A stretch of 64,000 bases of DNA, taken from Oculina patagonica (Eukaryota). The notes below the pieces were generated by a model. It had not been told where the DNA came from. It did not search any database and saw nothing but the letters and a program-made list of their open reading frames with translations. The stretch lies in the NCBI RefSeq assembly GCF_052425735.1, contig NC_135771.1, positions 5,828,001 to 5,892,000 on the forward strand, written 5' to 3'. Below, one piece after another: positions 10,006-62,934 of this stretch; position 1 is the stretch's first letter; each line of letters starts with the position of its first letter. The position numbers were made by a program, and so were the translations under genes.

Positions 10006-11025
10006 TCAACGTTTTTCCATCTCTTCTACTTGAAGCATGCTAGTTGTACCTGTTCTCGTTCTATTATCTGTACAACTTTGATTGATATTTTCGTTGCCAA
10101 GACGACCACAACTTATTGCCTTTTTAAAGGCCAGTTTGAACTGCGGGTTCATAATTCCGTAGATAATGGGATTTGCCAGGCTGCTGGAGAACATCAGGTA
10201 GATAACTACCGTATAGACCTCCCTTGGAATAACACCCCCAGCGGTCTCGATAATAACAACTATCGATACCGGACCCCATGTCATCAAAAAGACACAGACC
10301 ACGGTAAAAGTAGTCTTCAGTAGTTTCATATCAGTACGGTGAGAATTTGAAGTACCGACGCCATTTTCTGTGTCATGAGCATTTACATTTCGCGTACTTT
10401 CTTTCACCGTTTTGTAGATTTTGTAATAGAAATAAAATATTGCGGCTGTGGTTCCGTTAACGACTACGCCTGCGGTCAATATGGCGTATGAAATGTGCTC
10501 GATTTGCCAGTTGAAAGTGCAAACAAAGAACTTCTTATGATAAGCCATCTTCCCCCATCCGTACAACGGCGGCGTAGCCAAAAGTATTGCAATCAGCCAG
10601 ACAAGAAGACAGTATAACCGAGCCGCTCTTTTACTGGCGAATAGCTTGCTGTACAAGGCTGGTTTCACGACTTTTATATATCGGTTCAGAGCAATTAGGC
10701 CCATGTTAAGAATGGAAGCCATACCCAAGGTAAACTGTATTGATGCGGAGACTTCACACCACTTTTGGCTAAAACTCCACGTTCCCGTGTACATGCTCAC
10801 TACCCAGAACGGCATGTGAAGCGTTGCCATGGAGATGTCAGTCAGCGCCAAATTGTGAATAAAAATGTTCGTGATACTTTTGAGCCTGGAGTCTTTATAG
10901 ATAACATAAACCACCAGCAAATTGCCAAGCGTGGAAATGAGGCAGATTAGAATGGCCATGGTCACCTCGACACCAATTTCAGCAAGTGATCGACCGAGAG
11001 GATCTTGGGATGCTGATTGAGACAT
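10006..11025 (-). CDS. Rhodopsin-family (class A) GPCR, single coding exon, melatonin/amine-receptor-like orphan
   Basis: 339 aa, seven hydrophobic segments, GN, NLALTD, LNRY, TWGP, NPIIY, FKLAF helix 8; splice-acceptor-like TTTTAG just upstream of the ATG. Confidence 0.92.
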   Translation of the reverse strand: MSQSASQDPLGRSLAEIGVEVTMAILICLISTLGNLLVVYVIYKDSRLKSITNIFIHNLALTDISMATLHMPFWVVSMYTGTWSFSQKWCEVSASIQFTLGMASILNMGLIALNRYIKVVKPALYSKLFASKRAARLYCLLVWLIAILLATPPLYGWGKMAYHKKFFVCTFNWQIEHISYAILTAGVVVNGTTAAIFYFYYKIYKTVKESTRNVNAHDTENGVGTSNSHRTDMKLLKTTFTVVCVFLMTWGPVSIVVIIETAGGVIPREVYTVVIYLMFSSSLANPIIYGIMNPQFKLAFKKAISCGRLGNENINQSCTDNRTRTGTTSMLQVEEMEKR

Positions 11026-15766: not shown

Positions 15767-16814
15767 TTTCGTATCTGTTGTGTATTTCTGTGTCAGTATT
15801 TTAATTTGTATCTCATGTCTCTTATTTTGTTTTTGAATATTTTATTGATAATAAAGATTGTTTTGTATTATTTTGTTCACCAAACATGGGTCGTATCATA
15901 CTGAGTCATGGCACCCACGTAACCAAGCGGGGGGTTTGATTAATTACATAGTAATAAAAATCATTCGTTTTTATGTCATGTGTAAAATTAGCATAACCAG
16001 CAATAGCACTCCGCCTTGCAATAGGGCCAAATATGCGATATGGCTAAAATTCCGGGGGGAAGGGTGAAAGAGATGAAGTACTTCTCAAGGAAATTGGAGA
16101 CAGGGAAGTGTTACTGACGCCGTGGGTTAATCCCTCTCCCCAGAAAAAAACCCTATGATAAATGTCAACCCCCAAAATAATCTTGTCTTTCTTTTCCAGC
16201 CCCCCCAAAAATTTCATGAAACGCAAGAAAAGAGTAATCATTTAATTAAACATCAAAAATTCATCGCCAGACAGCATACTGTAATTTTCATATTCCGAAA
16301 CTCCCCTACGTCACACCCGGTGGGAAGGGCGGGGGGGGGGGGGAGGATGTAAAAGCTATAGCCAATGCAACTACACACCCCGCCCCCTCCAATCCCAGTG
16401 TAGAGGAGGTGGGGTGGAAGAGTGGTTGGGTTCATCAAAAGACTTGCAGCGTGGTTGAGTGTAAAGCGTTATTTAATTTGCGGAAATGTTTTTTTCCAAA
16501 TCTGGTAAGATATACTTATAGATATACAGTTTACATGAAAAGAACATTATAACGATTATATCATATTAGAATTGAAGATATGCATAACGGTGCAACGTAT
16601 AATGGTTAAATCGTGTTTGAATAGCGAAGCGCGCAAGGTCTTAAAATAGAATGCAAATGAATACCCCCCCCCCCCCCCCCTCTCTCTCTCCCCCACAAGG
16701 CACAGAAAACAACAACGTGTTCTAAGAGAAATAGAGATAATCTAGGCGAAGTTTTTGTTTTAGTAAAGTGTTTTAGGAACACCGGCTGTTTTAGAAAGTG
16801 TTTTAGGAAAATCG

Positions 16815-16879
16815 TCCGCCATTCTGGTTTGTTTGTCTGAGTCATGACGTCACTCGCGCGCTTCGCTATTGAACACGTG
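16815..16879. promoter_or_regulatory. Motif cluster (YY1-like, AP-1, CRE, E-box) downstream of reductase A; repeated at 20301-20365
   Basis: CCGCCATT, TGAGTCA (16838-16844) abutting TGACGTCA (16845-16852), and CACGTG (16874-16879). Confidence 0.4.
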
Positions 16880-16986
16880 CAGAACGGTGCTATATATTTA
16901 CAATGCAATAAAAAAAACTCGGTCTAAAGTTCTTTAAGTTCTAAAATAATTGACTTAACAAGTTTTGTAGAGTTTGTTAATCGAGA

Positions 16987-18582
16987 TTAGAACTCGAAGA
17001 CTTCTTTGTGAAAGTCAAATGTAACACCTCCACAGCCTGCAGACGAATACTTGGAACACAGTTTCTCGATGCTGTCAACCAAGGAGGTTGGTCCACATGA
17101 TAACACGGCCACACGGTGCTCTCCTTGTTCAGTCGCGCAGCCTTTCATCTTACTGAACAGCTCTGGGAGCTCAGGACGGCCGAATTTTAGATCTGGTTGC
17201 ATCTCTGGACGGATGTTAGCCTCTGCAAACTTGGACGAATCTCGTTCTCTGGTGAGATGGAAGTAATTTTCCATCACCTCGCTTGGCTCGCCTCTCGTGA
17301 CAAGGTCTGGAGTGAAGGACATAGGAAGACGATGATCCGAATTCTGCTGGAAGTATTCCTTGTCGTAGTCAAGTACTGATGTCACCATGAAGAGGTCGCG
17401 GACCGACCAGATGAACATGACCTTCCGGATGTCCCTTCCTCGTCTTCGTTGATGGAGAACGTCGTTGCAGATGGACTGCATAGGGGTGATGCCGATGCCT
17501 CCACTGACGAACATGAACAACTTGTAGCGATCACCATCTACATCTAGGCATGGAGCTCCGTACGGCCCGTCCAAGTAAACATCGATTGGTTTCGTCCTCT
17601 CTACGTAATCGTACAGCCGCTGGGTCCAGTCACCAAGGACGCGGATATGTATAGAGACCATGTTCTCGTGGGGGGAGGAGGACAGGCTGAAGGGATGCCA
17701 TTCAAAATAGGACACGCCTGGTACACAAATGAAGCAGTACTGACCGGATTTGTAGTTGAAATCTCCCTTGAGGAACGTCAGGCGAATGACATTGGAGGGC
17801 AATCTCACGGCCAAAATACTTCGCTGCTTTCGGTTGTTGATAAATGCGATCAGCGCCCGGACTAGTATGTCGAACACCCACAGACCCACCCCGTACAGAA
17901 TCGCTCCGGCGCCATGAGCTATGGCGGCACCAATTGCAAGCAGGAACAGCACCCAGTGTAGTCGATAGAAAGCCTCGAAGATCTTCCGGCGAATAAACCA
18001 GAGGGATAGCAGGCAGAGGCCAGCCATGGAGCCAGTAAGTAGAAGACCCGACGCATCCCACTCTGTGGACACATAACCATGCCAAGCACCAACAATGACA
18101 CTGACATAGGCGCACAGTTTATGCCAAAACAGCGCTCGTTCAAACGGCAGGCCAGTAAACAGCACCCATAGCGAGTTTCTGCAAGCGAAGGCGAATGCCA
18201 GAGCCGGTGCGATGTTAGCAATGGCCCCAGTTCCTTCGCCTTCGTCGTCGTCTAAACCGATCACACCCAACGCCGCGGCGAGTCCGCCGATGAGCAGCAC
18301 AAAAAAAAGCACCTCTCCAAGAACGATGCCAAACAGAAGGCGAGTGTGGAAAATGCTTAGTATCTTCCAGCGGCAGTAGTAATACAGTGGCCAAGGTATC
18401 AAGCGATTCAGCACGGGCGATTCGTACTTGGAATCTTCGTATGCTTTCCATCGCTTAGGAGCTTGTTGTTCGGGGTCTTCCATGCTGAAATGTTCTACAA
18501 CTGCCGGTTGTTGCAGTTGTTGTGGCTCGGCTTGCTCCGTTCGTTCAAGCTGCTTGAACGATACTCTGTAGATCCCTTTCAT
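16987..18582 (-). CDS. Ferric-reductase-domain transmembrane flavocytochrome (FRE/FRO-like, NOX superfamily), copy A, intronless
   Basis: Four heme His in H-x13-H and H-x13-H pairs, RNS..LFTGLPFERALFWH, GQYCFI, EWHPFSLSS (FAD), DGPYG, SGGIGITP (NADPH), FIWSVR, GRP, CGP, C-terminal FHKEVFEF; first ATG at 18582. Confidence 0.9.
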   Translation of the reverse strand: MKGIYRVSFKQLERTEQAEPQQLQQPAVVEHFSMEDPEQQAPKRWKAYEDSKYESPVLNRLIPWPLYYYCRWKILSIFHTRLLFGIVLGEVLFFVLLIGGLAAALGVIGLDDDEGEGTGAIANIAPALAFAFACRNSLWVLFTGLPFERALFWHKLCAYVSVIVGAWHGYVSTEWDASGLLLTGSMAGLCLLSLWFIRRKIFEAFYRLHWVLFLLAIGAAIAHGAGAILYGVGLWVFDILVRALIAFINNRKQRSILAVRLPSNVIRLTFLKGDFNYKSGQYCFICVPGVSYFEWHPFSLSSSPHENMVSIHIRVLGDWTQRLYDYVERTKPIDVYLDGPYGAPCLDVDGDRYKLFMFVSGGIGITPMQSICNDVLHQRRRGRDIRKVMFIWSVRDLFMVTSVLDYDKEYFQQNSDHRLPMSFTPDLVTRGEPSEVMENYFHLTRERDSSKFAEANIRPEMQPDLKFGRPELPELFSKMKGCATEQGEHRVAVLSCGPTSLVDSIEKLCSKYSSAGCGGVTFDFHKEVFEF

Positions 18583-18689
18583 GTTCAAAGCCAGCCAAAA
18601 GCGCTCGTAAAATCCGGCTAAAGTTGTATTGACAAACTAGCGGTTTAATGTTCGGCGCAGAATGTAACGGCCAACCAAAATAACCGTAG

Positions 18690-18695
18690 TTTATA
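18690..18695 (-). promoter_or_regulatory. Candidate TATA box for reductase copy A (conserved in copy B at 22175-22180)
   Basis: TATAAA about 108 bp upstream of the ATG in both duplicates. Confidence 0.4.
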
Positions 18696-19452
18696 ATCTG
18701 TCTTGCCTGTACACTCCAACGCACAAATTTTACTGGCGTGAGTAAATAACAATAAAAAGGATTTGAGCCTTTGTTTCAACGTCGTAGCCTAGCGGCGAAG
18801 GAACATTGTTTTGCAAAACAGTACATAAAAATAATGCTTCCGTCACGGAAACATTATCTCTCTTCGCGACCTTAACCCGGATGTAGAAATTCCAAAAAAT
18901 GTCTTTAGCCGAAAATGTACGGCGAAACAAACCTAAAAATATTGGTATATAGATGCCGATCAAGCAAAAAAGTAAATTTTTTCCGAGACATAGGTCTCTA
19001 CTATGAATTTAGTCTCGACAAAAGACTTAAACAAAGAAAAAAAACACTAATTTGCATGTTATAAATATAAACGTGATTTTATGCACGGAATGGACTTCAA
19101 TGAAAACTGACCTCACATTATTCCGCTTCGAAATTTAATCTTCAGCTTTGACAAACAGTGTTAGTTGCTAAGATATCTATATAAACAGTTTTATTAATAG
19201 TTCATGCATCATTTTTTCAACTCTTTCTTTGCAGTTTACTGACATGTAAACATTGCTTCCATAACTGCCACAGGCACTTTCACTCGTGTTTTTTATATAC
19301 TTATATACACCCATGTTTGCAGTGTTGTTTTTCACATGGTTTTGTCCATGTTTTCAGTGTAAGGATAGTCCTGTCTATTCTCACTTTCCTTATCGAGACG
19401 ACATGATATTTCGAATTCTTGACCTATTGAGTAATAGTCACGCTATGATCAA

Positions 19453-19493
19453 TCTGCTGAAGAGACCCAATCAGGTCGAAACAGCTGTCCAGA
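19453..19493 (+). ncRNA. Type-I hammerhead ribozyme in the spacer between the reductase duplicates
   Basis: UCUG-CUGAAGA-GACC(CAAUCA)GGUC-GAAA-CAGCUG-UC-CAGA: canonical core, paired stems I and II, palindromic stem III. Confidence 0.82.
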
Positions 19494-20470
19494 GTTTGCA
19501 TTGTTTCGTTTCTACGTAGTGTCAGCCTTGCTTATCTTGTCTCCAGACGTCGTCTGTCTTGTCTCTGTATTTTTATTTTTGGCTTATTAGAGCTTCTTTT
19601 TTACTGTGCCATGTACGTCAAGACATTGTTTGGTCTGTTTGCTGCAGAATTTCTTGTTGTGTGACACCATTGCGTCCTAAAAATATTCACAAGTTCAAGT
19701 CGAATATCAGTACCGTATTACCTAGCGCGCGGAAATAACACATAACACATTATTCGTGGTGACAACACACACGATTATTTCCGGGCTTCTAGTGGTAACC
19801 ACAGGTTAGAAAGTGCGGGCTTTGACGCACTTAGAAAAGGTACTGGTACGAGAGTGCGTACTGTTTTACTGTTTTGTGCGTACTGTTTTTTGACGGGGAG
19901 GGGTTGGATGGGGGACGTCAAAAGACTTGCAGCGTGCTTGAGTGTTTAACGTTATATTTAATTTGCAGAAATGCTTTTTTCCAAATCTGGTAAGATATAC
20001 TCATATACGGTTTACATAAAATGACAATTATTACGATTATATATATATATATATCATATAAGGATTGAAGATACGCATAACGGTGCAACATATAACGGTT
20101 AAATCGTGTTTGAATAGCGAAGCGCGCGATGTTTAAAAATAGAATGCAAATGAATACCCACCCCCCCCCCCCTCCTCTCCACGAGGCACAGAAAACAACA
20201 GCGTGTTCGGAGAGAAATAGAGAGAATCTAGGCGAAGTTTTTGTTTTTATAAGGTGCTTTAGGAACACCCGCTGTTTTAGAAAGTGTTGTAGGAAAATTG
20301 TCCGCCATTCTGGTTTGTTTGTCTGAGTCATGACGTCACTCGCGCGCTTCGCTATCAAACACGTGATTAACGGTGAAATATATTTACAAAGAATAAAAAA
20401 ACTAGGTCTAAAGCTCTTTCAAGTACTAAAATAATTGAAGTAACAAGATCTGTCGAGTCTGTTGACTAGA

Positions 20471-22066
20471 TTAGAACTCGAAGACTTCTTTATGAAAGTC
20501 AAATGTAACTCCTCCACAGCCTGCAGTCGAATACTTGGAACACAGTTTCTCGATGCTGTCAACCAAGGAGGTTGGTCCACATGATAACACGGCCACACGG
20601 TGCTCTCCTTGTTCAGTTGCGTAGCCTTTCATCTTGCTGAACAGATCTGGGAGCTCAGGACGGCCGAATTTCACATCTGGCTGCATCTCTGGGCGGATGT
20701 TAGCCTCTGCAAACTTAGACGAATCTCTTTCTCTGGTCAGATGGAAGTAATTTTCCATCACATCACTAGGCTCGCCTCTCGCGACAAGATCTGGAGTGAA
20801 GGACATGGGAAGCCGATGATCTGAATTCTGCTGGAAGTATTCCTTGTCGTAGTCGAGCACTGATGTCACCATGAAGAGGTCTCGGACCGACCAGATGAAC
20901 ATCACCTTCCGGATGTCTCGCCCTCGTCTTCGTTGATGGAGGACATCATTGCAGATGGACTGCATGGGTGTGATGCCGATGCCTCCACTGACGAACATGA
21001 ACAACTTGTAGCGATCACCATCTACATCTAGGCATGGAGCTCCGTACGGTCCATCCAAGTAAACATTGATCGGTTTCGTCTTCTCTACGTAATCGTACAG
21101 CCGCTGGGTCCAGTCACCAAGGACGCGGATATGTATCGAGACCATGTTCTCGTGGGGGGAAGAGGACAAGCTGAAGGGATGCCATTCAAAATAGGACACG
21201 CCTGGTACACAAATGAAGCAGTACTGACCGGATTTATAGTTGAAGTCTCCCTTGAGGAACGTCAGGCGGATGACATTTGAGGGTAGTCTCACGGCCAAGA
21301 TGCTTCGCTGCTTTCGGTTGTTGATAAATGCGATCAGCGCCCGGACTAGTACGTCGAATACCCACAGGCCAACCCCGAACAGAATCGCTCCGGCGCCATG
21401 AGCTATGGCGGCACCAATCGCCAGGAGGAACAGCACCCAGTGTAGTCGATAGAAAGCCTCGAAGATCTTCCGGCGAATAAACCAGAGGGATAGCAGGCAG
21501 AGGCCAGCCATGGAGCCAGTAAGTAGAAGACCCGACGCATCCCACTCTGTGGACACATAACCATGCCAAGCACCGACAATCACACTGACATAGGCGCACA
21601 GTTTATGCCAAAACAGCGCTCGTTCAAACGGCAGGCCAGTAAACAGCACCCATAGCGAGTTTCTGCAAGCGAAGGCGAATGCAAGAGCCGGTGCGATGTT
21701 AGCAATGGCCCCAGTTCCTTCGCCTTCGTCGTCGTTCAGACCGATCACACCCAACGCTGCGGCGAGTCCGCCGATGAGCAGCACAAACACAAGCACCTCT
21801 CCAAGAACGATGCCAAACAGAAGGCGAGTATGGAAAATGCTTAGTATCTTCCAGCGGCAGTAGTAATACAGTGGCCAAGGTATCAAGCGATTCAGCACGG
21901 GTGATTCGTACTTGGAATCTTCGTATGCTTTCCATTGCTTAGGAGCTTGTTGTTCGACGTCTTCCATGCGGAGCTGTTCTACAACCACCGGTTGTTGCAT
22001 TTGTTGTGGCTCGGCTTGCTCCGTTCGACCCGGCTCTTTGATTGATACTCTGTAGGTCCCTTCCAT
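20471..22066 (-). CDS. Ferric-reductase-domain transmembrane flavocytochrome (FRE/FRO-like), copy B, intronless
   Basis: Same length and motifs as copy A; about 25 amino-acid differences counted by eye; first ATG at 22066. Confidence 0.9.
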   Translation of the reverse strand: MEGTYRVSIKEPGRTEQAEPQQMQQPVVVEQLRMEDVEQQAPKQWKAYEDSKYESPVLNRLIPWPLYYYCRWKILSIFHTRLLFGIVLGEVLVFVLLIGGLAAALGVIGLNDDEGEGTGAIANIAPALAFAFACRNSLWVLFTGLPFERALFWHKLCAYVSVIVGAWHGYVSTEWDASGLLLTGSMAGLCLLSLWFIRRKIFEAFYRLHWVLFLLAIGAAIAHGAGAILFGVGLWVFDVLVRALIAFINNRKQRSILAVRLPSNVIRLTFLKGDFNYKSGQYCFICVPGVSYFEWHPFSLSSSPHENMVSIHIRVLGDWTQRLYDYVEKTKPINVYLDGPYGAPCLDVDGDRYKLFMFVSGGIGITPMQSICNDVLHQRRRGRDIRKVMFIWSVRDLFMVTSVLDYDKEYFQQNSDHRLPMSFTPDLVARGEPSDVMENYFHLTRERDSSKFAEANIRPEMQPDVKFGRPELPDLFSKMKGYATEQGEHRVAVLSCGPTSLVDSIEKLCSKYSTAGCGGVTFDFHKEVFEF

Positions 22067-23136
22067 TTTCAAAGCCAGCTAACACCGCTTGTACGACCCG
22101 GCTAGAGTTGTATTGACAAACTAGCGGTTTGATGTACGGCCCAGAATGTAACGGCCAACCAAAATAAACCGTATTTTATAATCTGTCTTGCCTGTACACT
22201 CCAACGCACAAATTCTCCAGGGATGAGTAAATCAAAATAAAAAGGATTTGAGCCTTTGTTTCAACGTCGTAGCTTAGCGGCGACGGAACATTGTTTTGCA
22301 AACAGTACATAAAAAATTATGCTTCCGTCACGAAAACATTATCTCTCTACACGACCTTAACGTCCTTAACCCGGGTGTAGAAATTCCAAGAAATGTCTTA
22401 GCCGAAAATGCACGGCAAAACAACCCTAAAAATATTAGTTTATAGATACCGATCAAGCAAAAAAGTAAATTTTTACAAGACATCGGTCTCCATTATGAAT
22501 GTGGTCTCGGCAAAAGACTTCAACAAAGAAAAAACACTAATTTGCATGTTTAAAATATATACGTGATCTTATGCAAATAGAATGGACTCCAACCAAAACT
22601 GACGTCACATTATTCCGCTTCGAAGTCTCCAGCTATGAAAAACAGTGTTAGTTGCTAAGATCTCTGTATAAACAGTTTTATTAATAGTTCAAGCGTCATT
22701 TTTTGTACTCTTTCTTTGCATTTTTTATTTTACTCTTACATGTAAACATTCCTTCTATAGCTGCCACAGGCACTTCCACCCGTGTTATTTATATACGTAT
22801 ATACTTCATACGTATGTAATAACATTATCATAACAACAGTATTTAGTTTTTATTTCAACGACTTGAAGTAATACCTGATAGCTGTGTCAATATACTTCGT
22901 TCAAAATCAATTTTTCCCTGTTATGTATGTTTTTCCGAGACAAATTTAATCAACTTGTGTTTCGTGATAGTATACTTTAATAACGTTTTTTACTCCGAAG
23001 GTAACACAAACTTCAAAGAAAATGGAAGCTTCTGCGGTTACCAATTACACGCGATCTTCGTTTAAACACTCGGTTCAGGGGTTCATTCAAATCTCAAGAA
23101 TATATAGAATCCCGGTCAGCATCGACTGAAAGCATT

Positions 23137-28477: not shown

Positions 28478-29072
28478 TTTATTAGTAGTGCTGATATTAA
28501 TTGAACCGTAAATCCGCCGTTTTCCGTATGTATAGCTTTTTCTGGCAACCTAAGTAGCGCGAAATTTTTATATATTGCCAAAATATGCCTGGTATACTTC
28601 AGCAAACTCTATGATAAAAGGCGCTTTGTTACGGATTTTAACAAATAATTGATTTAAACAGCCAAAATTTGTATTTGTGTCGTAGGAAACCTTGATACGC
28701 AACTTAACCCATGAAAAACATCTTTGAACATATAAAGGAAGGAATAACCTTAATTTGCGGAGAGAAATCAAACTTCGGCTATAAATATCGATACAACTTA
28801 AAACGTTTAGCCTCAATTTTTCAATTCCATCCTAGTCATCCGCAGCCAAAGACGTTTGTTGTAAGTTTCAGTGCTCTAATATAACAAACGTTAATAACAA
28901 TGGACCATTAGTTTAAAGTTTCAGAACAGTTAAGACCAAAAATCTGCGAAATCCCCGTGACGTAGCTCCTTTAGGTTGTGGAAGAGGTCATGCAGAGAAA
29001 ATCTGGGCTTTTGATCATATGTATTAAATCTTTCTATTTTTTCAATTGCAGTTTCTAAACTAAGTGACAGCC

Positions 29073-30212
29073 ATGGGAAACAACATACAGGTCAATTCAA
29101 CTTTCACCGCCAGAAATTACTCCAACACGACAAACGGCACCTATGGGTACAAACCAACGGAACCTGTTCCGCCCTTCAGATCCCCCCAAGATTTAGAAGA
29201 CGTGTGGGATCAGTTAAAAGCCTTGGCTTGTGTCAGTACACTGACGTTTGCGATCAATCTTTCCATGGTGATATTCACTTCTTACAGACTCAGAGCTGTA
29301 CCGTACATGTTTATCCAGAATTTTATGGTCATCGACATCGTAAACGCCCTAGTTACAGCTGGTCCTTGGGCAACGGGTGTCTGGCTGGATTTTTTTGGGC
29401 TGCAGGTGGTATCATTCCTATGCCGCATTCAAGGATTCTTTCACAACACCCTGGCTACTGTGTTCTTGGGAACCGTCACTGCCATTGCAGCCAGCCGCTA
29501 CCTGTACGTGGTGTCGCCACACGCCTATGCTATGTTCTTCGTGAACAAGCCCGTTGTCCGCTTGTTGCTGTTCACCATCTGGTTCGGTGCAGGCTTCTTG
29601 GCCGCTCCACCATTAAACCCAGACACCTGGGGAGCCTATGGGAAGTTTGAAGGCACCTGTTGGGTCTCCTGGGAGAAGGGGAACGTTGCCGCTGTGACTT
29701 ACTCAGCGTTCCACACCGTCATCACCCTTGGCCCCGCTGTCATCTTCACCGTGTTGGCAATCGTCTTCATTGTGCTGAAGAAGAAGAACTCCATCCACCC
29801 CGCACCGGCCGCGCCCTCCATGCAGCTGAACAACAACCAGCCAGGACTGCCGCCTCCGACACCAACCATGATGGGGTCAACCCGAGGAGGAACGCACTTC
29901 TTGAACCTGGAGGTGCTGTACATCTCGTGCGCCTTGTTCCTGCTGTATCTGATACTGTGGACCGCGATGACTGTGGTGGAATCCCTCATCATTGTCGACT
30001 GGCGTACCGTGGACTACAAAGTGGTGATTGTGCTTACATTCCTGTACCAGTCACGTGGTCTGATGCACCCTTTCCTATATCTCCTTCTCAGCGCCGAGAT
30101 GAGGCATGCCTTTGTGAAGTGCACAGGTAAAGGGCAGGCTGGGATAACGCTGTCCGCTGATAGAGGCGCTCTGTCTCAGTCCATCGCTGACATGCAAGCC
30201 CCCAGGCACTGA
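29073..30212 (+). CDS. Divergent rhodopsin-family orphan GPCR, single coding exon
   Basis: N-terminus rich in NxS/T sites, seven hydrophobic segments, TM3 Cys (LCRIQG), SRY in place of DRY, ECL2 Cys, HPFLY in place of NPxxY, helix 8 EMRHAF; acceptor TTGCAG at about 29051. Confidence 0.85.
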   Translation: MGNNIQVNSTFTARNYSNTTNGTYGYKPTEPVPPFRSPQDLEDVWDQLKALACVSTLTFAINLSMVIFTSYRLRAVPYMFIQNFMVIDIVNALVTAGPWATGVWLDFFGLQVVSFLCRIQGFFHNTLATVFLGTVTAIAASRYLYVVSPHAYAMFFVNKPVVRLLLFTIWFGAGFLAAPPLNPDTWGAYGKFEGTCWVSWEKGNVAAVTYSAFHTVITLGPAVIFTVLAIVFIVLKKKNSIHPAPAAPSMQLNNNQPGLPPPTPTMMGSTRGGTHFLNLEVLYISCALFLLYLILWTAMTVVESLIIVDWRTVDYKVVIVLTFLYQSRGLMHPFLYLLLSAEMRHAFVKCTGKGQAGITLSADRGALSQSIADMQAPRH

Positions 30213-58800: not shown

Positions 58801-61800
58801 ACAGAACTATGTAAACCACCACCGGGCGGAGGCTAAAACGTATTACCACAAAATGGATTACCCGCAGTTCACGTAGATCGTTCAAAGTGGTGTAATAAAT
58901 GTGGCTATAGGTGTAAACGGATTTTACTAGATTTTTAAACAGCCCAAATTATATTTGGGTCGTAGGAAACTTAAAAATAATGATCCATTTTTATTAGCAA
59001 TTGCTATTTTAGAGCGCTAAAACTGTTTTAAAGCCCGTTTGGCAGCGGATGGCTCGGATGAAAATGGATTGCAATTTGAAAACGTTAGCCAACGTTTTCA
59101 ACTTGTTTCCGCGTGCCTTAAAAATGATCGATAATTATAGCCGAAGTTTGATTTCTATCCCCAAATAAAGGTTATATCTTCCGTTAAATGTTAAAAGACA
59201 ATGTATTTGAATTTTCAAGGGTAAATTTGCCTACCACTTATCTAAGAACAGTTTAGACCAAAAGAACATGAAATTCCCGTGAATGGCCTAATGATCATAC
59301 CTTTGCTATCTCCTTTGCTGATATGAACTCCAAGAGGTGATACTGAGATTTGAACATCCTCGTGCTTCCAGATGTCCTCGTCAGACTCAGGAAACAACAT
59401 CGAGTTACAAATCTTGGTCTCATACAACTCATGTAACAACATACGCTGTGAATAAAAGGAAACAAACACTGCATTGCACTGTACTGCATTGCGCTTCCTC
59501 TCTCAGGACCTGTTTACACGATTCCGGAATGACTTTCGTTCCGGAACAAAACTCGTTCCGGAATGAAGTTCGTTCTGCATCCACATGACAGAGTCGACCG
59601 GCTTAATCTAAGGCGTTTCTCACGTGCGTGGCTTACGCGTGAGATCAAAAACAAAGATGGCGCGGCTTTCGCGCAAACATGTTATTGTGCCCATTAATGG
59701 CCATATCTGCAATTTTAACAAGCAGTTTAACCATAAGGCTGCTTTTCTGGGTTAAACAGGAAATGCTTATGCGTTTTTTCACTCTGAGTTCAAACTGTGG
59801 CCTCTGTATATGGTTTCACGGGATGCGGTTTTATCTCGGAACGAAATTCGTTTTGTGTTTACATGATACCAGAATGAGATGTCATTCCAGATCGAAAATT
59901 TAATTTCGGAATGAAAACCGGAATGAACTCATTCCGGAATGACTTGACTTTCGTCTCGGTATCATGTAAACAGATACAGAGAAATAGAGAAAGGGAATGT
60001 TACACTTGCGAAAACTTTGTCAAAATTGTCACACAATTGATTGCCGAAAACTGTCACGTAAGTCTAACCTTTACTACAAACATTCCTACCTGATTAACAA
60101 TGCGGCATGTTTCATGAATAGCATTCGTGACCATCTCTACCAGACCATTAGCTTTTGTTGCACAAAACGCTTTAGGATCATCTGACTCTCTGGGTTAAAA
60201 AAAATGACAAAAAATGACTGTTAGTAATCATAAAGCTTACAATGGTTTATTACCATAAAGCATGAAAAAAAATTCTTCATGGTACAAAATAAAAAACCGT
60301 TCAACTTGATGTACAAGTGATAACCCAGCGTACTAAAATTTAATTAAAAAGTATCGGCATAACATGCATTTTTCCTGCACATGTGCATATGCTGAACTTG
60401 ACCAATATATGAAAGAACATTTGATCCACATTTCTTAATTTAAACACAGTTTGGCACGAAGGAAAACAAACCTTTTACAAGCTTTGTGTTAAGAGGAACG
60501 CAACTAAGCATAGAAACAACAAAGCTTTTTTATCAGTCCAGTACCGTCTCCTACTTTGGATCTGTTTGATCATAATATTCTTAACAGGGAGTCTTTTTTT
60601 GTTTACAAAATTTGCCTCAATGGCATAAGCGCTTTACTTTCTGATCGAGCTACAAGAATATCAATTCTGAATATTGAAAGTACATGGTACGATTAAATTT
60701 CGCTAAACATTTGAGCCCGATGTATTAAATACTTTTTCTATGACGCAGGTTTATTTGAAAACGTGATATTTTACAAAGGATGTATGGGCTCATTTGCGCT
60801 TTTGCCACCCAGAAATTTTGCGGGTTTTGAACGCTTATATCTCCTTGAATATTGCACACAAAGAGCTGGAAAATGTCGCTGATTATTAAGTTTCACAAGC
60901 TCTATAAATATTCGAGACAGCAGCAAAAATGTAGAAATTTTCAAAAATAATACGACTTTGTTAATTTTCACGAACATGTTTCGACGGTACATCCGTCATC
61001 GTCAGTGTGACGGTTATGAAAGTTAACAGTGATTTAAAACGTGCCTGTTCTGCCTGTTGCAAATCATACGTTACATTGCGTTGAAAAGCAATACGCTAGA
61101 TAAAATTCGAAGTTAACGGAATTAAAAAGAAGCGCGCGCGCGTGCAGCTACACGGAAAGCGTCAAATTGATGTGTTTGACCTGTTGATTAAGGTCCGGCT
61201 TTTTCCACTTGATGTACATAGACTCCTTAAGCTTAACCTGGTACTTAGTAGGCCCAGAGTCTAAGATCTTGAAGCAGTCAAAGTTACAAGAGGTACGGCA
61301 TGACTCTGAAGCCTGCAAATGCTTATAAACGTGAGAGGTTCTGTCCGATGACAAGTGCTCGTGCACGCGCGTGGAGAAATGTCGGCTTGTTTCACCAACG
61401 TAACAAGCATTACAGCTTGAACAAGAAAATTTGTACACGATGCACGTACGGAGCCTGTCAGGGAGAGGATCTTTCACGTTGAACAAGTTCTTAATTTTAA
61501 AAGTAGAATAAACAAATTTGATGTCGATGGGTTTACAGAATCTATCGATTAGCTTGCACACCCTTTGTTGTGCAACACCCGAAAAATGCCCGATGTAGGG
61601 GATCTTGAAATAGTGCTTGGGCAACTCCTGTTGCTCGACACCTGTTGAAGGTCGTTTGTCGTTCCCTACTACTTCTCTCGTGACATAACGGTGGAGTAAC
61701 ATGTCTAATACATGCTCACTGTAAACTTTCATAACCGTCACACTGACGATGACGGATGTACCGTCGAAACATGTTTGTGAAAATTAAAAAAGTCGTATTA

Positions 61801-62934
61801 TTTTTGAAAATCTCTATAAATATCTGGAATCAATTTGTATATAGCATAATGCCTTATCTACGCAAAGTTGTATGCTAATGAGGCAAAATGAAAACAATAA
61901 CGACAGCAAAGATCGCCCTATATACTTACCTCCGATGAAAGAAGATAGCCACTTCATTATCGAATATCCTCATCACAAGCCAAAACTGTAAGTACTCTTC
62001 AGCAATCTCGCTGGCATTCTGCTCTTCTTGACGCGGAGTGCACGGACTGGGTGAGCTACCCTCGTCTTCCTCTGTTGCAGTGTATCCGGAGTCAGCTGTG
62101 GTGACGTCTACGGCAGGCATGATTAACTTCCCAATCGGGGTGCTACCAGCAGAGGAAACAAATGAAGAGTCCTTGACTGGGGTGACCGCAGCTGGGCTGT
62201 CTGGCTCCTCTTGTGTGGGAAGCTGCTTGCCTACCTGGCCGAGATGCGGGTGTTTAGGGGGTGGTGTTCTCTCTCCGTCCTCCGCGGCGGCGTCTTCTTG
62301 TGAAACAGTAACTGCTGGTGGTTCAATGGAAACGTCTGAATCACTAACGTCTTCTTGAGTGATCGTTGACTGCTTCTCTTCGTATATAGCCAAAAGGCCA
62401 TCATTTGCTGCAGCGTGGGGCTCAACAGTGTTTTCTACTTTAGAAAACGTTGTAGTTTCTTCGTCTCCCTTACTGGAATCCGCGAACCCTTTTGGAGTTG
62501 TAGCACCATTTTGATTATCCACTGATTTCTGCTCCTGTTTCACTAAACCACTCGTTCCTCCTTCCAGAGCCAACGGCGACACCACAGCAACCTGTTTCTC
62601 AACAAAACTTGTCAAGTAGTAATACTTCTCAGTTTCGTTCAGCACATATTCGGGCAAACTGATCTTTTCGAATTCTTTAACAAACAACTCTAAGCTCTGT
62701 TCAGCGCCATAGACAAACTGCAGGCGAACGTGACGGTTAATGCAGGAAGGATGGTCCCCAGGTTGTTTTACGTGGTGTTCGACTTTTTCAAGCATTGACC
62801 TGCTAACTGCTCCAATATGGCGGAGTTCAGAGACGATTTCGTCTTGTAAAAGCCATCGGATATCGTCGCATGTGCTGGTAACAGCCAGACGCTGGGAATG
62901 ACGAAGACCATGAAGAGGATCCACGCTATTATTT
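35299..62934 (-). CDS. SZT2: KICSTOR complex scaffold SZT2, 3' portion (29 exons; gene starts beyond the window end)
   Basis: GT-AG, phase-consistent exons: 61930-62934, 60090-60189, 59301-59445, 58099-58336, 57163-57349, 56055-56312, 55236-55509, 54464-54613, 53099-53710, 51889-52321, 51564-51746, 50633-50714, 49873-50005, 49686-49721, 49009-49148, 47000-47179, 46144-46224, 45709-45861, 45526-45550, 45109-45182, 43476-43855, 42713-42884, 42280-42354, 40648-40861, 39325-39760, 37428-37888, 36380-36516, 35874-36012, 35299-35433. Recognised SZT2-like blocks: [74 protein letters not shown]. Confidence 0.9.
37941..38504. mobile_element. Tc1/mariner (pogo-like) MITE in SZT2 intron
   Basis: TA-CAGTCAACTCTCTCTAA...TTAGAGAGAGTTGACTG-TA; internal GTGTCCGTCTTA repeats. 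Confidence 0.85.
38723..39116. mobile_element. MITE with CCGTATTTACTCGATTAAACGCCG TIRs
   Basis: Perfect ~24-bp inverted termini. Confidence 0.85.
39788..39942. mobile_element. Short TA-flanked MITE
   Basis: TA-CAGCAAGGCGCCCAAAAGTG...CACTTTTGGGCGCCTTGCTG-TA. Confidence 0.85.
41739..41836. repeat. 22-bp tandem repeat (GTACCATGTGACCGGACCATAT, about 4.4 copies) inside a MITE end
   Basis: Starts at 41739, 41761, 41783, 41805 and 41827; GTACAAAATCAGCCA at about 41612 is the inverse of TGGCTGATTTTGTAC at about 41728. Confidence 0.85.
42280..47179 (-). CDS. SZT2: SZT2 exons 47000-47179, 46144-46224, 45709-45861, 45526-45550, 45109-45182, 43476-43855, 42713-42884, 42280-42354
   Basis: TYNL...[56 protein letters not shown]. 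Confidence 0.88.
42950..44370. repeat. 106-bp satellite arrays flanking SZT2 exon 43476-43855 (dispersed copies about 39130-39265 and 56390-56615)
   Basis: GTGTGACCATTCAAATGAAAGCTATTGAGCAGTACTTTCATGTGGTACTG... at a 106-bp period (43898, 44004, 44110). Confidence 0.9.
44491..44928. repeat. ~210-230-bp tandem duplication in an intron
   Basis: GTTACTGCTTCAAATATCTTAT...CTCTGATAAGAAATTGTTGT present twice. Confidence 0.8.
47436..48616. mobile_element. Probable non-autonomous element with a long terminal hairpin (47443-47577)
   Basis: ~135-nt inverted repeat with a GCA loop at one end; GGAACCAATCAGATTGCAGGATT...GCCCGCTCGCG motif at the other; related fragment about 35760-35850. Confidence 0.55.
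48662..48842. mobile_element. Foldback MITE
   Basis: ATCATACTGATATGG...CGACTACAAAACTAGTT / AACTAGTTTTGTAGTCG...CCATATCAGTATGAT. Confidence 0.7.
49009..52321 (-). CDS. SZT2: SZT2 exons 51889-52321, 51564-51746, 50633-50714, 49873-50005, 49686-49721, 49009-49148
   Basis: [24 protein letters not shown]; splice phases consistent. Confidence 0.8.
49200..49590. repeat. (GACA)n/(GGCA)n tetranucleotide microsatellite
   Basis: Long degenerate GACA runs. Confidence 0.95.
52650..53039. mobile_element. TTAA-flanked MITE (Kolobok-like); related copies about 28560-28973, 58905-59280, 63356-63590
   Basis: TTAA-GGGGACTATGTAACGG...CCGTGACATGGTCCCT-TTAA; shared internal CATCCGCAGCCAAA, GTTTCCTACGAC. Confidence 0.75.
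53099..57349 (-). CDS. SZT2: SZT2 exons 57163-57349, 56055-56312, 55236-55509, 54464-54613, 53099-53710
   Basis: [12 protein letters not shown]...[39 protein letters not shown]...LRHALCD. Confidence 0.88.
58099..60189 (-). CDS. SZT2: SZT2 exons 60090-60189, 59301-59445, 58099-58336
   Basis: TCRIVNQ|[17 protein letters not shown]...[12 protein letters not shown]...NRKDMFVY. Confidence 0.88.
60912..61811 (-). mobile_element. 5'-truncated Penelope-like element in an SZT2 intron, with inverted pLTR and 12-bp TSD
   Basis: GIY-YIG ORF remnant 61148 to about 61715 (IVYKFSC...[16 protein letters not shown]...KPDLN); ~96-bp inverted repeat 60937-61032 / 61716-61811; CTCTATAAATAT at 60900-60911 and 61812-61823. 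Confidence 0.9.
61738..61780 (+). ncRNA. Minimal type-I hammerhead ribozyme (inverted pLTR copy; partner copy 60968-61010 on minus)
   Basis: UCACA-CUGACGA-U-GACGG(AUGUA)CCGUC-GAAA-CAUG-UU-UGUGA. Confidence 0.75.
61930..62934 (-). CDS. SZT2: SZT2 exon (largest in the window)
   Basis: TTTCTAG acceptor, [14 protein letters not shown]...FWLVMRI, AG|GTAAG donor. Confidence 0.88.

What the first reader, a model, noticed from the sequence alone, without database searches (positions are those of the whole stretch)
16987..22066. Duplicated intronless FRE/FRO-type ferric reductases in an animal genome: candidate horizontally acquired or relict metal-reduction system
Seen: two complete 531-aa, intron-free flavocytochromes in clearly metazoan DNA, with intron-rich SZT2, GPCRs and host-type repeats in the same gap-free stretch. 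Both heme His pairs are spaced H-x13-H. There are no EF-hand or peroxidase domains, TM4 has SG rather than TG, there is no His four residues after the second heme His, and the protein has an RNS..TG.PFER..WH loop and ends HKEVFEF. Known: animal NOX1-5/DUOX are multi-exon, have 13/12 spacing, the TG motif and an HKENF-type end, whereas 13/13 spacing is typical of yeast FRE1 and plant FRO metalloreductases. Animals usually reduce iron with STEAP and cytochrome b561 proteins. Inference: a reductive Fe/Cu uptake enzyme of non-animal type, possibly gained from an alga or protist and expanded in tandem; this would matter for iron supply in a symbiotic coral.
Basis: partly seen in the sequence, partly recalled or inferred. 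Interest (0 to 1): 0.8.

Follow-up and report, generated by a model that had tools for sequence, protein, structure and literature searches.

The report
Tandem unclassified NOX-like flavocytochromes in coral
The two intron-free genes are real, selected host genes, but they belong to an already published, uncharacterised "unclassified NOX-like" family found across Cnidaria and many algae and protists, not to the FRE/FRO ferric reductases, and they were not gained recently by corals.

Summary
Two uninterrupted minus-strand ORFs of 531 aa (16987-18582, 20471-22066) are 95% identical and under purifying selection (dN/dS 0.12). They sit between rhodopsin-type GPCR genes. Another coral has the same GPCR / tandem pair / GPCR layout.

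Each protein has a six-helix di-heme domain plus FAD and NADPH domains. There are no EF-hands and no peroxidase domain. The His-x13-His spacing on both helices, the absent "His119" and the HKEVFEF end are all confirmed.

- Massari et al. 2022 (PMC9421330) already list orthologues from Orbicella, Nematostella, Exaiptasia and Actinia as "Unknown" NOX-like sequences, next to Chlamydomonas RBOL and outside all NOX classes.
- I also found the family in Hydra, scyphozoans, an acoel, a chytrid and many protists.
- In my tree it forms its own clan (100/97), separate from NOX4/DUOX/RBOH and from plant FRO-type proteins.
- Its characters are mixed. The FRO-like ones are a short B-loop and no His119. The NOX-like ones are the (T/S)G motif and a compact dehydrogenase domain. 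The 13-residue TM5 spacing and tiny outer loops are its own.

The only characterised relative, Chlamydomonas RBO1, is needed for extracellular superoxide. Whether these proteins make superoxide or reduce metals is untested. The origin is old, either an ancient algal transfer or a relict.

The parts
16987..18582 (-). Copy A (downstream copy): complete intron-free CDS, 531 aa plus stop
   Evidence: A 1969-nt contig of run X11 is colinear with 16984-18810, with no joint inside the CDS.
20471..22066 (-). Copy B (upstream copy): complete intron-free CDS, 531 aa plus stop, 95% identical to copy A
   Evidence: Between the copies dN is 0.022, dS 0.186 and dN/dS 0.12.
17827..18321 (-). Copy A, six-helix ferric-reductase (heme) domain, aa 88-252. 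Heme ligands are H154/H209 (inner) and H168/H223 (outer); the S178-G179 dipeptide is here. The outer loops A, C and E are each only about 4 residues long.
   Evidence: AlphaFold model with pLDDT 85 and helices 88-109, 114-132, 147-172, 177-192, 202-223, 228-252. Invariant columns.
17548..17817 (-). Copy A, FAD-binding domain (aa 256-345) with EWHPFSLSSSP
   Evidence: Pfam FAD_binding_8, E 5e-21; motif.
16990..17523 (-). Copy A, NADPH-binding domain (aa 354-531) with GGIGITP, CGP and the end FDFHKEVFEF. It has no inserted helices.
   Evidence: Pfam NAD_binding_6 covers residues 354-510. Aligns to the NOX2 dehydrogenase domain at E 1.6e-33.
16435..19308 (-). Duplication unit A: CDS plus about 550 nt of 3' flank and about 725 nt of 5' flank
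   Evidence: blastn of the two halves: 90.45% over 2911 columns. Flanks are 85-86% identical and the CDS 94.5%.
19918..22804 (-). Duplication unit B
16472..16477 (-). Candidate poly(A) signal of copy A, about 509 nt after the stop. The equivalent signal of copy B is at 19957-19962.
   Evidence: Hexamer scan. Consensus match only, not shown to be used.
10006..11025 (-). Flanking rhodopsin-type GPCR gene, a syntenic marker of the host locus
   Evidence: Pfam 7tm_1, E 7e-50. 84% identical at DNA level to the GPCR flanking the tandem pair in another coral, L017 15293-16409.
29064..30212 (+). Flanking GPCR gene on the other side, also a syntenic marker
   Evidence: Pfam 7tm_1. 87% identical to L017 96-1244.

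Best explanation
What it is: a tandem pair of functional host genes. Each encodes a minimal transmembrane flavocytochrome of the 'unclassified NOX-like' family, which includes Chlamydomonas RBOL1/RBO1 and the cnidarian 'Unknown' sequences of Massari et al. 2022.

How it works:
- Shown by sequence and model: a cytosolic FAD/NADPH dehydrogenase domain is fused to six helices, and four invariant histidines are placed to hold two stacked hemes.
- Inferred: NADPH gives electrons to FAD. They pass through the inner heme (H154/H209) to the outer heme (H168/H223), and from there to an acceptor on the far side of the membrane.
- Inferred: the three outer loops are only about 4 residues long and the NOX 'His119' is missing. 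The outer heme is therefore probably exposed rather than capped by an O2 pocket.
- Inferred: there are no EF-hands and no long polybasic B-loop, so the protein is not regulated like NOX5/DUOX or NOX1-4.

Most likely acceptor: O2, giving extracellular or lumenal superoxide as genetically shown for Chlamydomonas RBO1 (about 0.5). Direct reduction of Fe(III)/Cu(II) chelates is the main alternative (about 0.3).

History: the gene was present before the cnidarian radiation and possibly before the cnidarian-bilaterian split. The tandem pair lies at a conserved coral locus. In this species the two copies have stayed, or become, 95% alike.
For: Real, selected host genes:
- Intact ORFs with dN/dS 0.12.
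- Only two copies in the 529-Mb assembly, 5.8 Mb into contig C14.
- Collinear GPCR / pair / GPCR locus in another coral.
- A DNA run of the same species covers the genes and spacers. Probable RNA runs cover only the CDS plus 230-380 nt upstream.

Family:
- All 120 listed hits with their TM3-TM5 region present have 13/13 spacing; nearly all have EWHPFS.SSSP and, where the C-terminus is present, the FDFHxExFEF-type end.
- The supplement of PMC9421330 holds Orbicella, Nematostella, Exaiptasia and Actinia orthologues labelled 'Unknown'. Their tree puts these next to Chlamydomonas and a chytrid, outside the eight NOX classes.
- My 73-row tree gives the family 100/97, the NOX clan 100/98 and plant FRO-type 100/100. 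The topology is the same under LG+C20.

Spread in animals: Actinostola, Exaiptasia, Hydra, Sanderia, Aurelia and Convolutriloba. Monophyly of Cnidaria (AU p 0.39) and of Cnidaria plus acoel (p 0.35) is not rejected.

Structure: AlphaFold model with pLDDT 85. The best solved match is human NOX2 (E 1.5e-25); SpNOX also matches.

Character table.

Function of a relative: RBO1 = Cre03.g188300 = P0093 is required for extracellular superoxide (PMC5016757).
Against: - No activity, localisation or regulation data exist for any animal member.
- Absence of His119 is the published mark of metalloreductases (Zhang 2013). The B-loop length and the two residues after the last aromatic match plant FRO-type proteins.
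- XTT reduction in the RBO1 study does not by itself exclude direct reductase activity.
- My FRO references are only two land-plant proteins, identified by architecture. No yeast FRE sequence was available.
- The RNA runs are only guessed to be RNA.
- The relatives nearest the animal sequences (clades c and d) come from unidentified organisms.
Confidence: 0.7

Rival explanations
1. Functional rival, the core of the first reader's idea: the proteins act mainly as cell-surface or symbiosome ferric/cupric-chelate reductases. They would be the only FRE-like reductive metal-uptake enzymes in animals, whatever their family name.
For: - No His at the NOX2-His119 position in any of the 57 family rows of the 73-row alignment. 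Zhang 2013 uses this position to separate NOX from metalloreductases.
- The short B-loop (18 residues) and the C-terminal +2 residues are shared with plant FRO-type proteins.
- Tiny outer loops suggest an exposed heme.
- Massari 2022 remark that the unclassified sequences resemble ferric reductases.
- A Trebouxia gene model fuses a family member to a VIT1 iron-transporter domain.
Against: - The (T/S)G dipeptide of NOX enzymes is kept in 51 of 57 members, whereas the FRO-type proteins have PG or AG.
- Chlamydomonas RBO1 is linked to superoxide.
- Family members are named after NoxA or NOX2 by four independent annotations.
- No MRE-type metal-response cores occur in four promoters (weak evidence).
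- The Trebouxia fusion may be a gene-model artefact.
Confidence: 0.3
2. Origin rival A: ancient horizontal transfer. A green-alga-like or other protist gene entered the animal lineage before the cnidarian radiation and was later lost or never spread elsewhere.
For: - The 18-row animal-bearing clade (100/99) is nested among protists. It is sister to a Klebsormidium / Symbiochloris / Chlamydomonas clade (aLRT 92 under LG+C20; 84/80 together with Heterosigma under LG+G4).
- Grouping it with the chytrid member is rejected (AU p 0.00045).
- The gene is intron-free in Anthozoa and in the scyphozoan-type clade.
- Among animals, published surveys report the family only from Cnidaria.
Against: - The family exists in chytrid fungi, so opisthokonts had it.
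- Only one long-branched chytrid row was tested, and the tested group was named after the tree was seen.
- The acoel protein's best hits are cnidarian, which fits inheritance within animals.
- Hydra has a GT-AG intron.
- Deep nodes have only moderate support.
Confidence: 0.45
3. Origin rival B: vertical relict. An ancient eukaryotic family was retained in Cnidaria and Acoela and lost in most other animals.
For: - Very broad spread: green algae, stramenopiles, haptophytes, dinoflagellates, a diplonemid, Paulinella, chytrids.
- Massari 2022 infer that these sequences predate the NOX classes.
- Monophyly of Cnidaria plus acoel is not rejected.
Against: - It requires many independent losses.
- The animal clade does not group with the chytrid.
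- Unidentified AT-rich, gene-dense marine eukaryotes interleave with the animal sequences.
Confidence: 0.35
4. Recent coral-specific transfer, or contamination or misassembly from the algal symbiont.
For: The genes are intron-free and slightly richer in G+C than their surroundings (0.46-0.48 against about 0.40).
Against: - Orthologous tandem locus with the same GPCR neighbours in another coral.
- Host-type interspersed repeats lie in both flanks, and a same-species DNA run covers the spacers.
- The Symbiodinium homologue is only 34% identical and sits elsewhere in the tree.
- Orthologues occur across Cnidaria.
Confidence: 0.02

Closest known systems
Cnidarian 'Unknown' NOX-like sequences of Massari et al. 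2022 (Orbicella XP_020631551, Nematostella XP_032234487, Exaiptasia XP_020899725 and XP_020894978, Actinia XP_031569869)
   Same: Same length class, the same N-terminal YEDSKYESP...RWKILSIFHTRL segment, the same loop, EWHPFSLSSSP, and an end of HKEVFEF (Nematostella HKEIFEF). These are orthologues of the window's genes.
   Different: Nothing essential. That paper did not report the tandem arrangement, intron status, spread into Medusozoa and Acoela, selection, or comparison with FRO.
Chlamydomonas reinhardtii RBOL1/RBO1 (Cre03.g188300, P0093) and RBOL2
   Same: Same family clan. Shares 13/13 spacing, TG, no His119, a short B-loop and the end HAEVFEF. There are no EF-hands. It is also a tandem pair in the alga (neighbouring gene ids Cre03.g188300 and Cre03.g188400).
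   Different: About 34% identity over 68% of the query. It has a longer loop C and an insert in the NADPH domain. Its role in light-dependent superoxide export may not carry over to an animal.
Plant ferric reduction oxidases (FRO-type: P0263 Deinandra, P0266 Lonicera; Swiss-Prot FRO1, 4, 5, 6, 7 by fold)
   Same: Core architecture. B-loop of 18 residues with a ..PFE.....H motif, no His119, and two residues after the last aromatic. Foldseek E is about 1e-23.
   Different: Separate clan in the tree. FRO-type proteins have a 12-residue TM5 spacing, PG or AG instead of (T/S)G, an insertion of about 100 residues in the NADPH domain, a longer loop C, and only 16-18% identity.
Canonical NOX enzymes (NOX2, NOX4, NOX5, DUOX, plant RBOH, Dictyostelium NoxA/B)
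   Same: Best solved and Swiss-Prot structural matches at 19-22% identity. The dehydrogenase domain matches NOX2 at E 1.6e-33. Shares the (T/S)G dipeptide and an F.FHKE.F-type end, as in RBOH.
   Different: NOX enzymes have His119, a 12-residue TM5 spacing, a B-loop of 23-27 residues and a loop C of 42-50 residues. Many also have EF-hands, a peroxidase domain or p22phox dependence. The family lies outside the NOX clan.
Bacterial SpNOX (Streptococcus pneumoniae)
   Same: A minimal six-helix plus dehydrogenase protein with short outer loops and no regulatory domains. Foldseek E 1.6e-16, TM-score about 0.6 normalised to the target.
   Different: 18-19% identity, bacterial, and not included in my tree.

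Membership tests
FRE/FRO metalloreductases (plant FRO type) | Ferric_reduct + FAD_binding_8 + NAD_binding_6 core without EF-hands | tested here: met
   Pfam. This core is shared by the whole superfamily, so it does not discriminate.
FRE/FRO metalloreductases (plant FRO type) | No His at the NOX2-His119 position (Zhang 2013) | tested here: met
   Ser172 in the window's proteins. None of the 57 family rows has His there.
FRE/FRO metalloreductases (plant FRO type) | Lacks the Thr/Ser of the NOX (T/S)G dipeptide (Zhang 2013; Massari 2022) | tested here: not met
   S178-G179 here. SG or TG in 51 of 57 family rows. The FRO-type rows have PG and AG.
FRE/FRO metalloreductases (plant FRO type) | Insertion with extra helices inside the NADPH-binding domain | tested here: not met
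   NAD_binding_6 spans 157 residues here, against 257-258 in P0263 and P0266.
FRE/FRO metalloreductases (plant FRO type) | Groups with FRO in a phylogeny | tested here: not met
   The family (100/97) and FRO-type (100/100) are separate clans, under both LG+G4 and LG+C20. Only two FRO-type rows were available, and no yeast FRE.
FRE/FRO metalloreductases (plant FRO type) | Fe(III)/Cu(II)-chelate reductase activity | not testable with these tools
   Needs expression and ferrozine/BPS assays.
Canonical NOX (NOX1-5, DUOX, RBOH, NoxA-C) | Non-ligand His119 at the outer heme | tested here: not met
   All 13 NOX rows have His; the family has none.
Canonical NOX (NOX1-5, DUOX, RBOH, NoxA-C) | (T/S)G dipeptide in TM4 | tested here: met
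   SG here, with G179 invariant.
Canonical NOX (NOX1-5, DUOX, RBOH, NoxA-C) | 13/12 spacing of the heme His pairs | tested here: not met
   13/13 in all 57 family rows. The second spacing is 12 in all NOX rows.
Canonical NOX (NOX1-5, DUOX, RBOH, NoxA-C) | Falls inside one of the eight NOX classes | tested here: not met
   Outside the NOX clan in my trees and in the published tree.
Unclassified NOX-like family (Massari 2022 'Unknown'; Chlamydomonas RBOL type) | Orthology to the published cnidarian 'Unknown' sequences | tested here: met
   The printed Orbicella, Exaiptasia and Nematostella sequences carry the same motifs from the N-terminus to the end.
Unclassified NOX-like family (Massari 2022 'Unknown'; Chlamydomonas RBOL type) | Monophyly with Chlamydomonas RBOL1 and the protist members | tested here: met
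   57-row clan at 100/97 and aLRT 96 under LG+C20.
Unclassified NOX-like family (Massari 2022 'Unknown'; Chlamydomonas RBOL type) | Family signature: 13/13 spacing, 18-residue B-loop, EWHPFS.SSSP, end F.FH.E.F plus 2 residues, no EF-hand | tested here: met
Unclassified NOX-like family (Massari 2022 'Unknown'; Chlamydomonas RBOL type) | NADPH-dependent extracellular superoxide production (shown only for Chlamydomonas RBO1) | not testable with these tools
   PMC5016757. No animal member has been assayed.

The most novel reading that the evidence does not exclude
A flavocytochrome of green-algal type entered the animal lineage before the cnidarian radiation. It survives as the only FRE-like ectoreductase of animals. 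It would reduce Fe(III)/Cu(II) at the cell surface or symbiosome membrane, directly or through superoxide. It would also be an overlooked third source of the DPI-sensitive extracellular superoxide that coral studies now assign to NOX2 and NOX4.
Probability: 0.15. Interest if true: 0.7.

Novelty: new member of a known kind. Interest (0 to 1): 0.35.

Why it matters
Coral studies of reactive oxygen species count only NOX2 and NOX4 (PMC13069887, PMC11721785). This third, well-conserved and selected NOX-like type has no assigned function in any animal.

If it exports electrons to O2, it is a candidate source of coral surface superoxide. If it reduces iron or copper, it would contradict the 2013 statement that no metazoan eukaryotic FRE orthologue had been identified (PMC3591440), and it would bear on metal supply in symbiosis.

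Its mixed NOX and FRO characters also make it a natural test of which residues decide between O2 and metal reduction. Its nested position among algal sequences is a testable case of ancient transfer against relict retention.

Tried and rejected
- A single-sequence AlphaFold run gave a useless model (pLDDT 41). It was replaced by a run on an alignment.
- The first AU test included two wrong rows through a name-prefix slip and is void. It was redone.
- Synteny with mycosporine-pathway genes: a DHQS-like gene and an O-methyltransferase gene flank the homologue in L009. In this genome those genes are on contig C13, not near the window, so this lead was dropped.
- I tried to name the organisms of clade c from a neighbouring scramblase gene. 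Only unnamed metagenome relatives turned up, with the best named hits in a ciliate (42%) and Cafeteria (36%). Their identity stays open.
- The Protein Atlas search returned only generic fungal ferric-reductase-like clusters.
- Metal-response-element cores: none in the four 800-nt promoters, against a background of 0.39 per 800 nt. This is uninformative.
- SZT2 could not be confirmed from ORFs of 110 aa or more.
- The acoel gene is not on record in the look-up of encoding contigs, so its intron structure is unknown.
- Earlier scan notes had nothing on this family.
- The search of protein representatives and complex prediction were not used. Unnamed hits would not have settled the open questions, and no binding claim is made.

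Full report
OBSERVATION. The window holds two uninterrupted minus-strand ORFs. From the first ATG each is 531 aa: 16987-18582 (copy A) and 20471-22066 (copy B). They are 506/531 identical with no gaps. Pfam finds Ferric_reduct, FAD_binding_8 and NAD_binding_6 in both, and nothing else. H154-x13-H168 and H209-x13-H223 are there, with Ser rather than His four residues after H168. S178-G179 sits at the NOX2 T178-G179 position. The loop reads CRNSLWVLFTGLPFERALFWH and the protein ends FDFHKEVFEF.

The duplicated unit is 16435-19308 versus 19918-22804, 90.45% identical. Within the CDS 88 of 1596 bases differ. dN is 0.022, dS is 0.186 and dN/dS is 0.12, and 13 of the 25 amino-acid changes fall in the first 44 residues. 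Both copies are therefore under purifying selection.

HOST CONTEXT. The window is C14:5828001-5892000 of a 529-Mb assembly. A search with the protein itself found only these two copies; a FAD_binding_8 search added exon-sized matches on C9 and C6, probably the canonical NOX genes. Around the pair lie rhodopsin-type GPCR ORFs and a Penelope-like RT+GIY-YIG ORF. A 192-kb contig from another coral (its proteins are 85-87% identical to the window's) carries the same order: GPCR, two tandem copies, GPCR. Collinear DNA matches run across about 20 kb.

A DNA run of the same species covers the genes and the unique spacers. High-copy interspersed repeats lie in both 3' flanks. Contamination and misjoining are effectively excluded. 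SZT2 could not be confirmed.

TRANSCRIPTION. The evidence is suggestive only. Three runs guessed to be RNA have contigs on the CDS and 230-380 nt upstream, but zero depth in the unique intergenic bins that the DNA run covers. One 1969-nt contig is colinear with 16984-18810, so the CDS has no intron.

WHAT FAMILY. The closest proteins are unnamed coral and anemone sequences (62-86% identity), then Actinostola (71%), Exaiptasia (61%), Hydra (57%) and a scyphozoan-type group (about 50%; Sanderia, Aurelia). Next come an acoel, Convolutriloba (40%), and then green algae (Klebsormidium, Symbiochloris, Trebouxia, Chlamydomonas CHLRE_03g188300), Heterosigma, diatoms, a haptophyte and Symbiodinium. Where the region is present, all listed hits have 13/13 spacing; nearly all have EWHPFS.SSSP and an F.FH.E.F(E/N/D)(F/L)-type end.

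The family is already in the literature. The supplementary FASTA of Massari et al. 2022 (PMC9421330) contains Orbicella, Nematostella, Actinia and two Exaiptasia proteins labelled 'Unknown', with the same motifs from end to end. Their tree places these next to a Chlamydomonas 'Unknown' (TBE 0.996) and then a chytrid (0.998), outside all eight NOX classes. The authors note a resemblance to ferric reductases. Other surveys and coral ROS papers list only NOX1-3-like and NOX4 for cnidarians.

NOX OR FRE/FRO? A search with the acoel protein returned named references:
- DUOX, E about 1e-25.
- Fish NOX4, about 1e-20.
- RBOH, about 1e-19.
- Two land-plant proteins with FRO architecture, including the roughly 100-residue insertion in the NADPH domain, about 1e-14.

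An L-INS-i alignment and a 73-row maximum-likelihood tree give three separate clans: the family (57 rows, 100/97), NOX4+DUOX+RBOH (100/98) and plant FRO-type (100/100). The topology is the same under LG+C20.

The characters are mixed:

| Character | This family | Plant FRO-type | NOX |
|---|---|---|---|
| B-loop length | 18 | 18 | 23-27 |
| His119 | absent | absent | present |
| TM4 dipeptide | SG/TG | PG/AG | TG |
| TM5 His spacing | 13 | 12 | 12 |
| Residues between distal TM3 His and the TM4 Gly (loop C) | about 10 in the cnidarian proteins (28 in the acoel; median 18, up to 86, in protists) | 30 | 42-50 |
| NADPH domain | compact | with insertion | compact |
| Residues after the last aromatic | two | two | none |

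This is the 'preNOX' pattern of Zhang et al. 2013.

The AlphaFold model (pLDDT 85) matches human NOX2 best among solved structures. Among Swiss-Prot models it matches NOX, RBOH and Dictyostelium Nox (19-22% identity) slightly better than FRO or Frp1 (16-18%). The proteins are therefore members neither of FRE/FRO nor of a NOX class. They belong to the unclassified NOX-like family.

MECHANISM. What is shown is a cytosolic FAD/NADPH module, six helices and four invariant heme histidines. The electron path from NADPH through FAD, the inner heme and the outer heme to an external acceptor is inferred. The outer loops are each about 4 residues long and His119 is missing. This argues for an exposed outer heme, as in bacterial SpNOX, and hence for a permissive acceptor site. 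No EF-hand or polybasic B-loop is present.

The only characterised relative is Chlamydomonas RBO1 (Cre03.g188300). It is required for DPI-sensitive extracellular superoxide and for current output (PMC5016757). I rate superoxide production at about 0.5 and direct metal reduction at about 0.3. A Trebouxia gene model that fuses a member to a VIT1 domain is a weak hint toward iron.

ORIGIN. The gene is intron-free in Actinostola and in two members of the scyphozoan-type clade. Hydra has one GT-AG intron plus a frameshift. The animal sequences lie in an 18-row clade (100/99), together with sequences from unidentified AT-rich, gene-dense marine eukaryotes, one of which carries three tandem copies. 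This clade is sister to green algae (aLRT 92 under LG+C20).

The chytrid member branches at the base of the family. Forcing it together with the animal clade is rejected (AU p 0.00045). That test used one long branch, and the group was named after the tree was seen. Monophyly of Cnidaria (p 0.39) and of Cnidaria plus acoel (p 0.35) is not rejected, and the acoel's best hits are cnidarian. Any transfer was therefore ancient, not coral-specific. I put ancient transfer at about 0.45 and relict retention at about 0.35.

The tandem pair is shared with another coral, where the two copies are 87% alike. The 95% identity here points to gene conversion or to a second duplication.

VERDICT. This is a new member of a published but uncharacterised family. 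The interest is moderate. It rests on the untested function, on the fact that coral ROS work overlooks this gene, and on the open question of origin.

Noticed in passing
window 5573-7714 (-); also 61148-61741 and 61926-62924 (-): A Penelope-like retroelement ORF of 713 aa with RVT_1 plus a C-terminal GIY-YIG domain. A second GIY-YIG ORF near 61 kb lies next to a 332-aa ORF with no Pfam hit, and may be another copy.
   Followed up: partly
window 16500-16900, 19300-19900, 20100-20500: Very high-copy interspersed repeats in the 3' flanks and the spacer of the tandem genes. Contig word depth reaches 10^3-10^4 in all four runs, with many joints between the two copies.
   Followed up: no
L009 10435-14581; own genome C13:21381397-21412177: In another cnidarian contig the homologue lies next to O-methyltransferase and DHQS-like ORFs, which look like the first two mycosporine-pathway genes. 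In this genome the DHQS-like exons are on contig C13, so the neighbourhood is not conserved.
   Followed up: partly
L014/L015 8031-13574; L016 10001-11605: Marine metagenome scaffolds (27-34% G+C, about one gene per 1-1.5 kb) from an unidentified eukaryote carry one to three tandem copies of the family. These copies branch among the animal sequences. The neighbouring scramblase has only unnamed relatives.
   Followed up: partly
P0056 (Trebouxia sp. C0006), residues 607-680: A gene model that fuses a family member to a partial VIT1 (vacuolar iron transporter) domain. It may be a real fusion or two merged neighbouring genes.
   Followed up: partly
L007 6223-6898 and about 6925 (Hydra vulgaris): The Hydra orthologue has one GT..AG intron after residue 74. 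It needs a one-base frame correction near residue 82, which could be an assembly error or incipient decay.
   Followed up: partly
L017 7039-8622 and 10001-11587: In another coral the tandem copies are only 87% identical to each other and 85-87% to both window copies. The pair is therefore old, and the window's copies have probably been homogenised.
   Followed up: partly
window 41-87 aa of both proteins (about 18322-18462 for copy A): A conserved cytosolic N-terminal segment before TM1 (W.PYE....E.P......P...Y..RW..L..F..R). It is modelled with pLDDT near 90, is kept from algae to corals, and has no known function.
   Followed up: no
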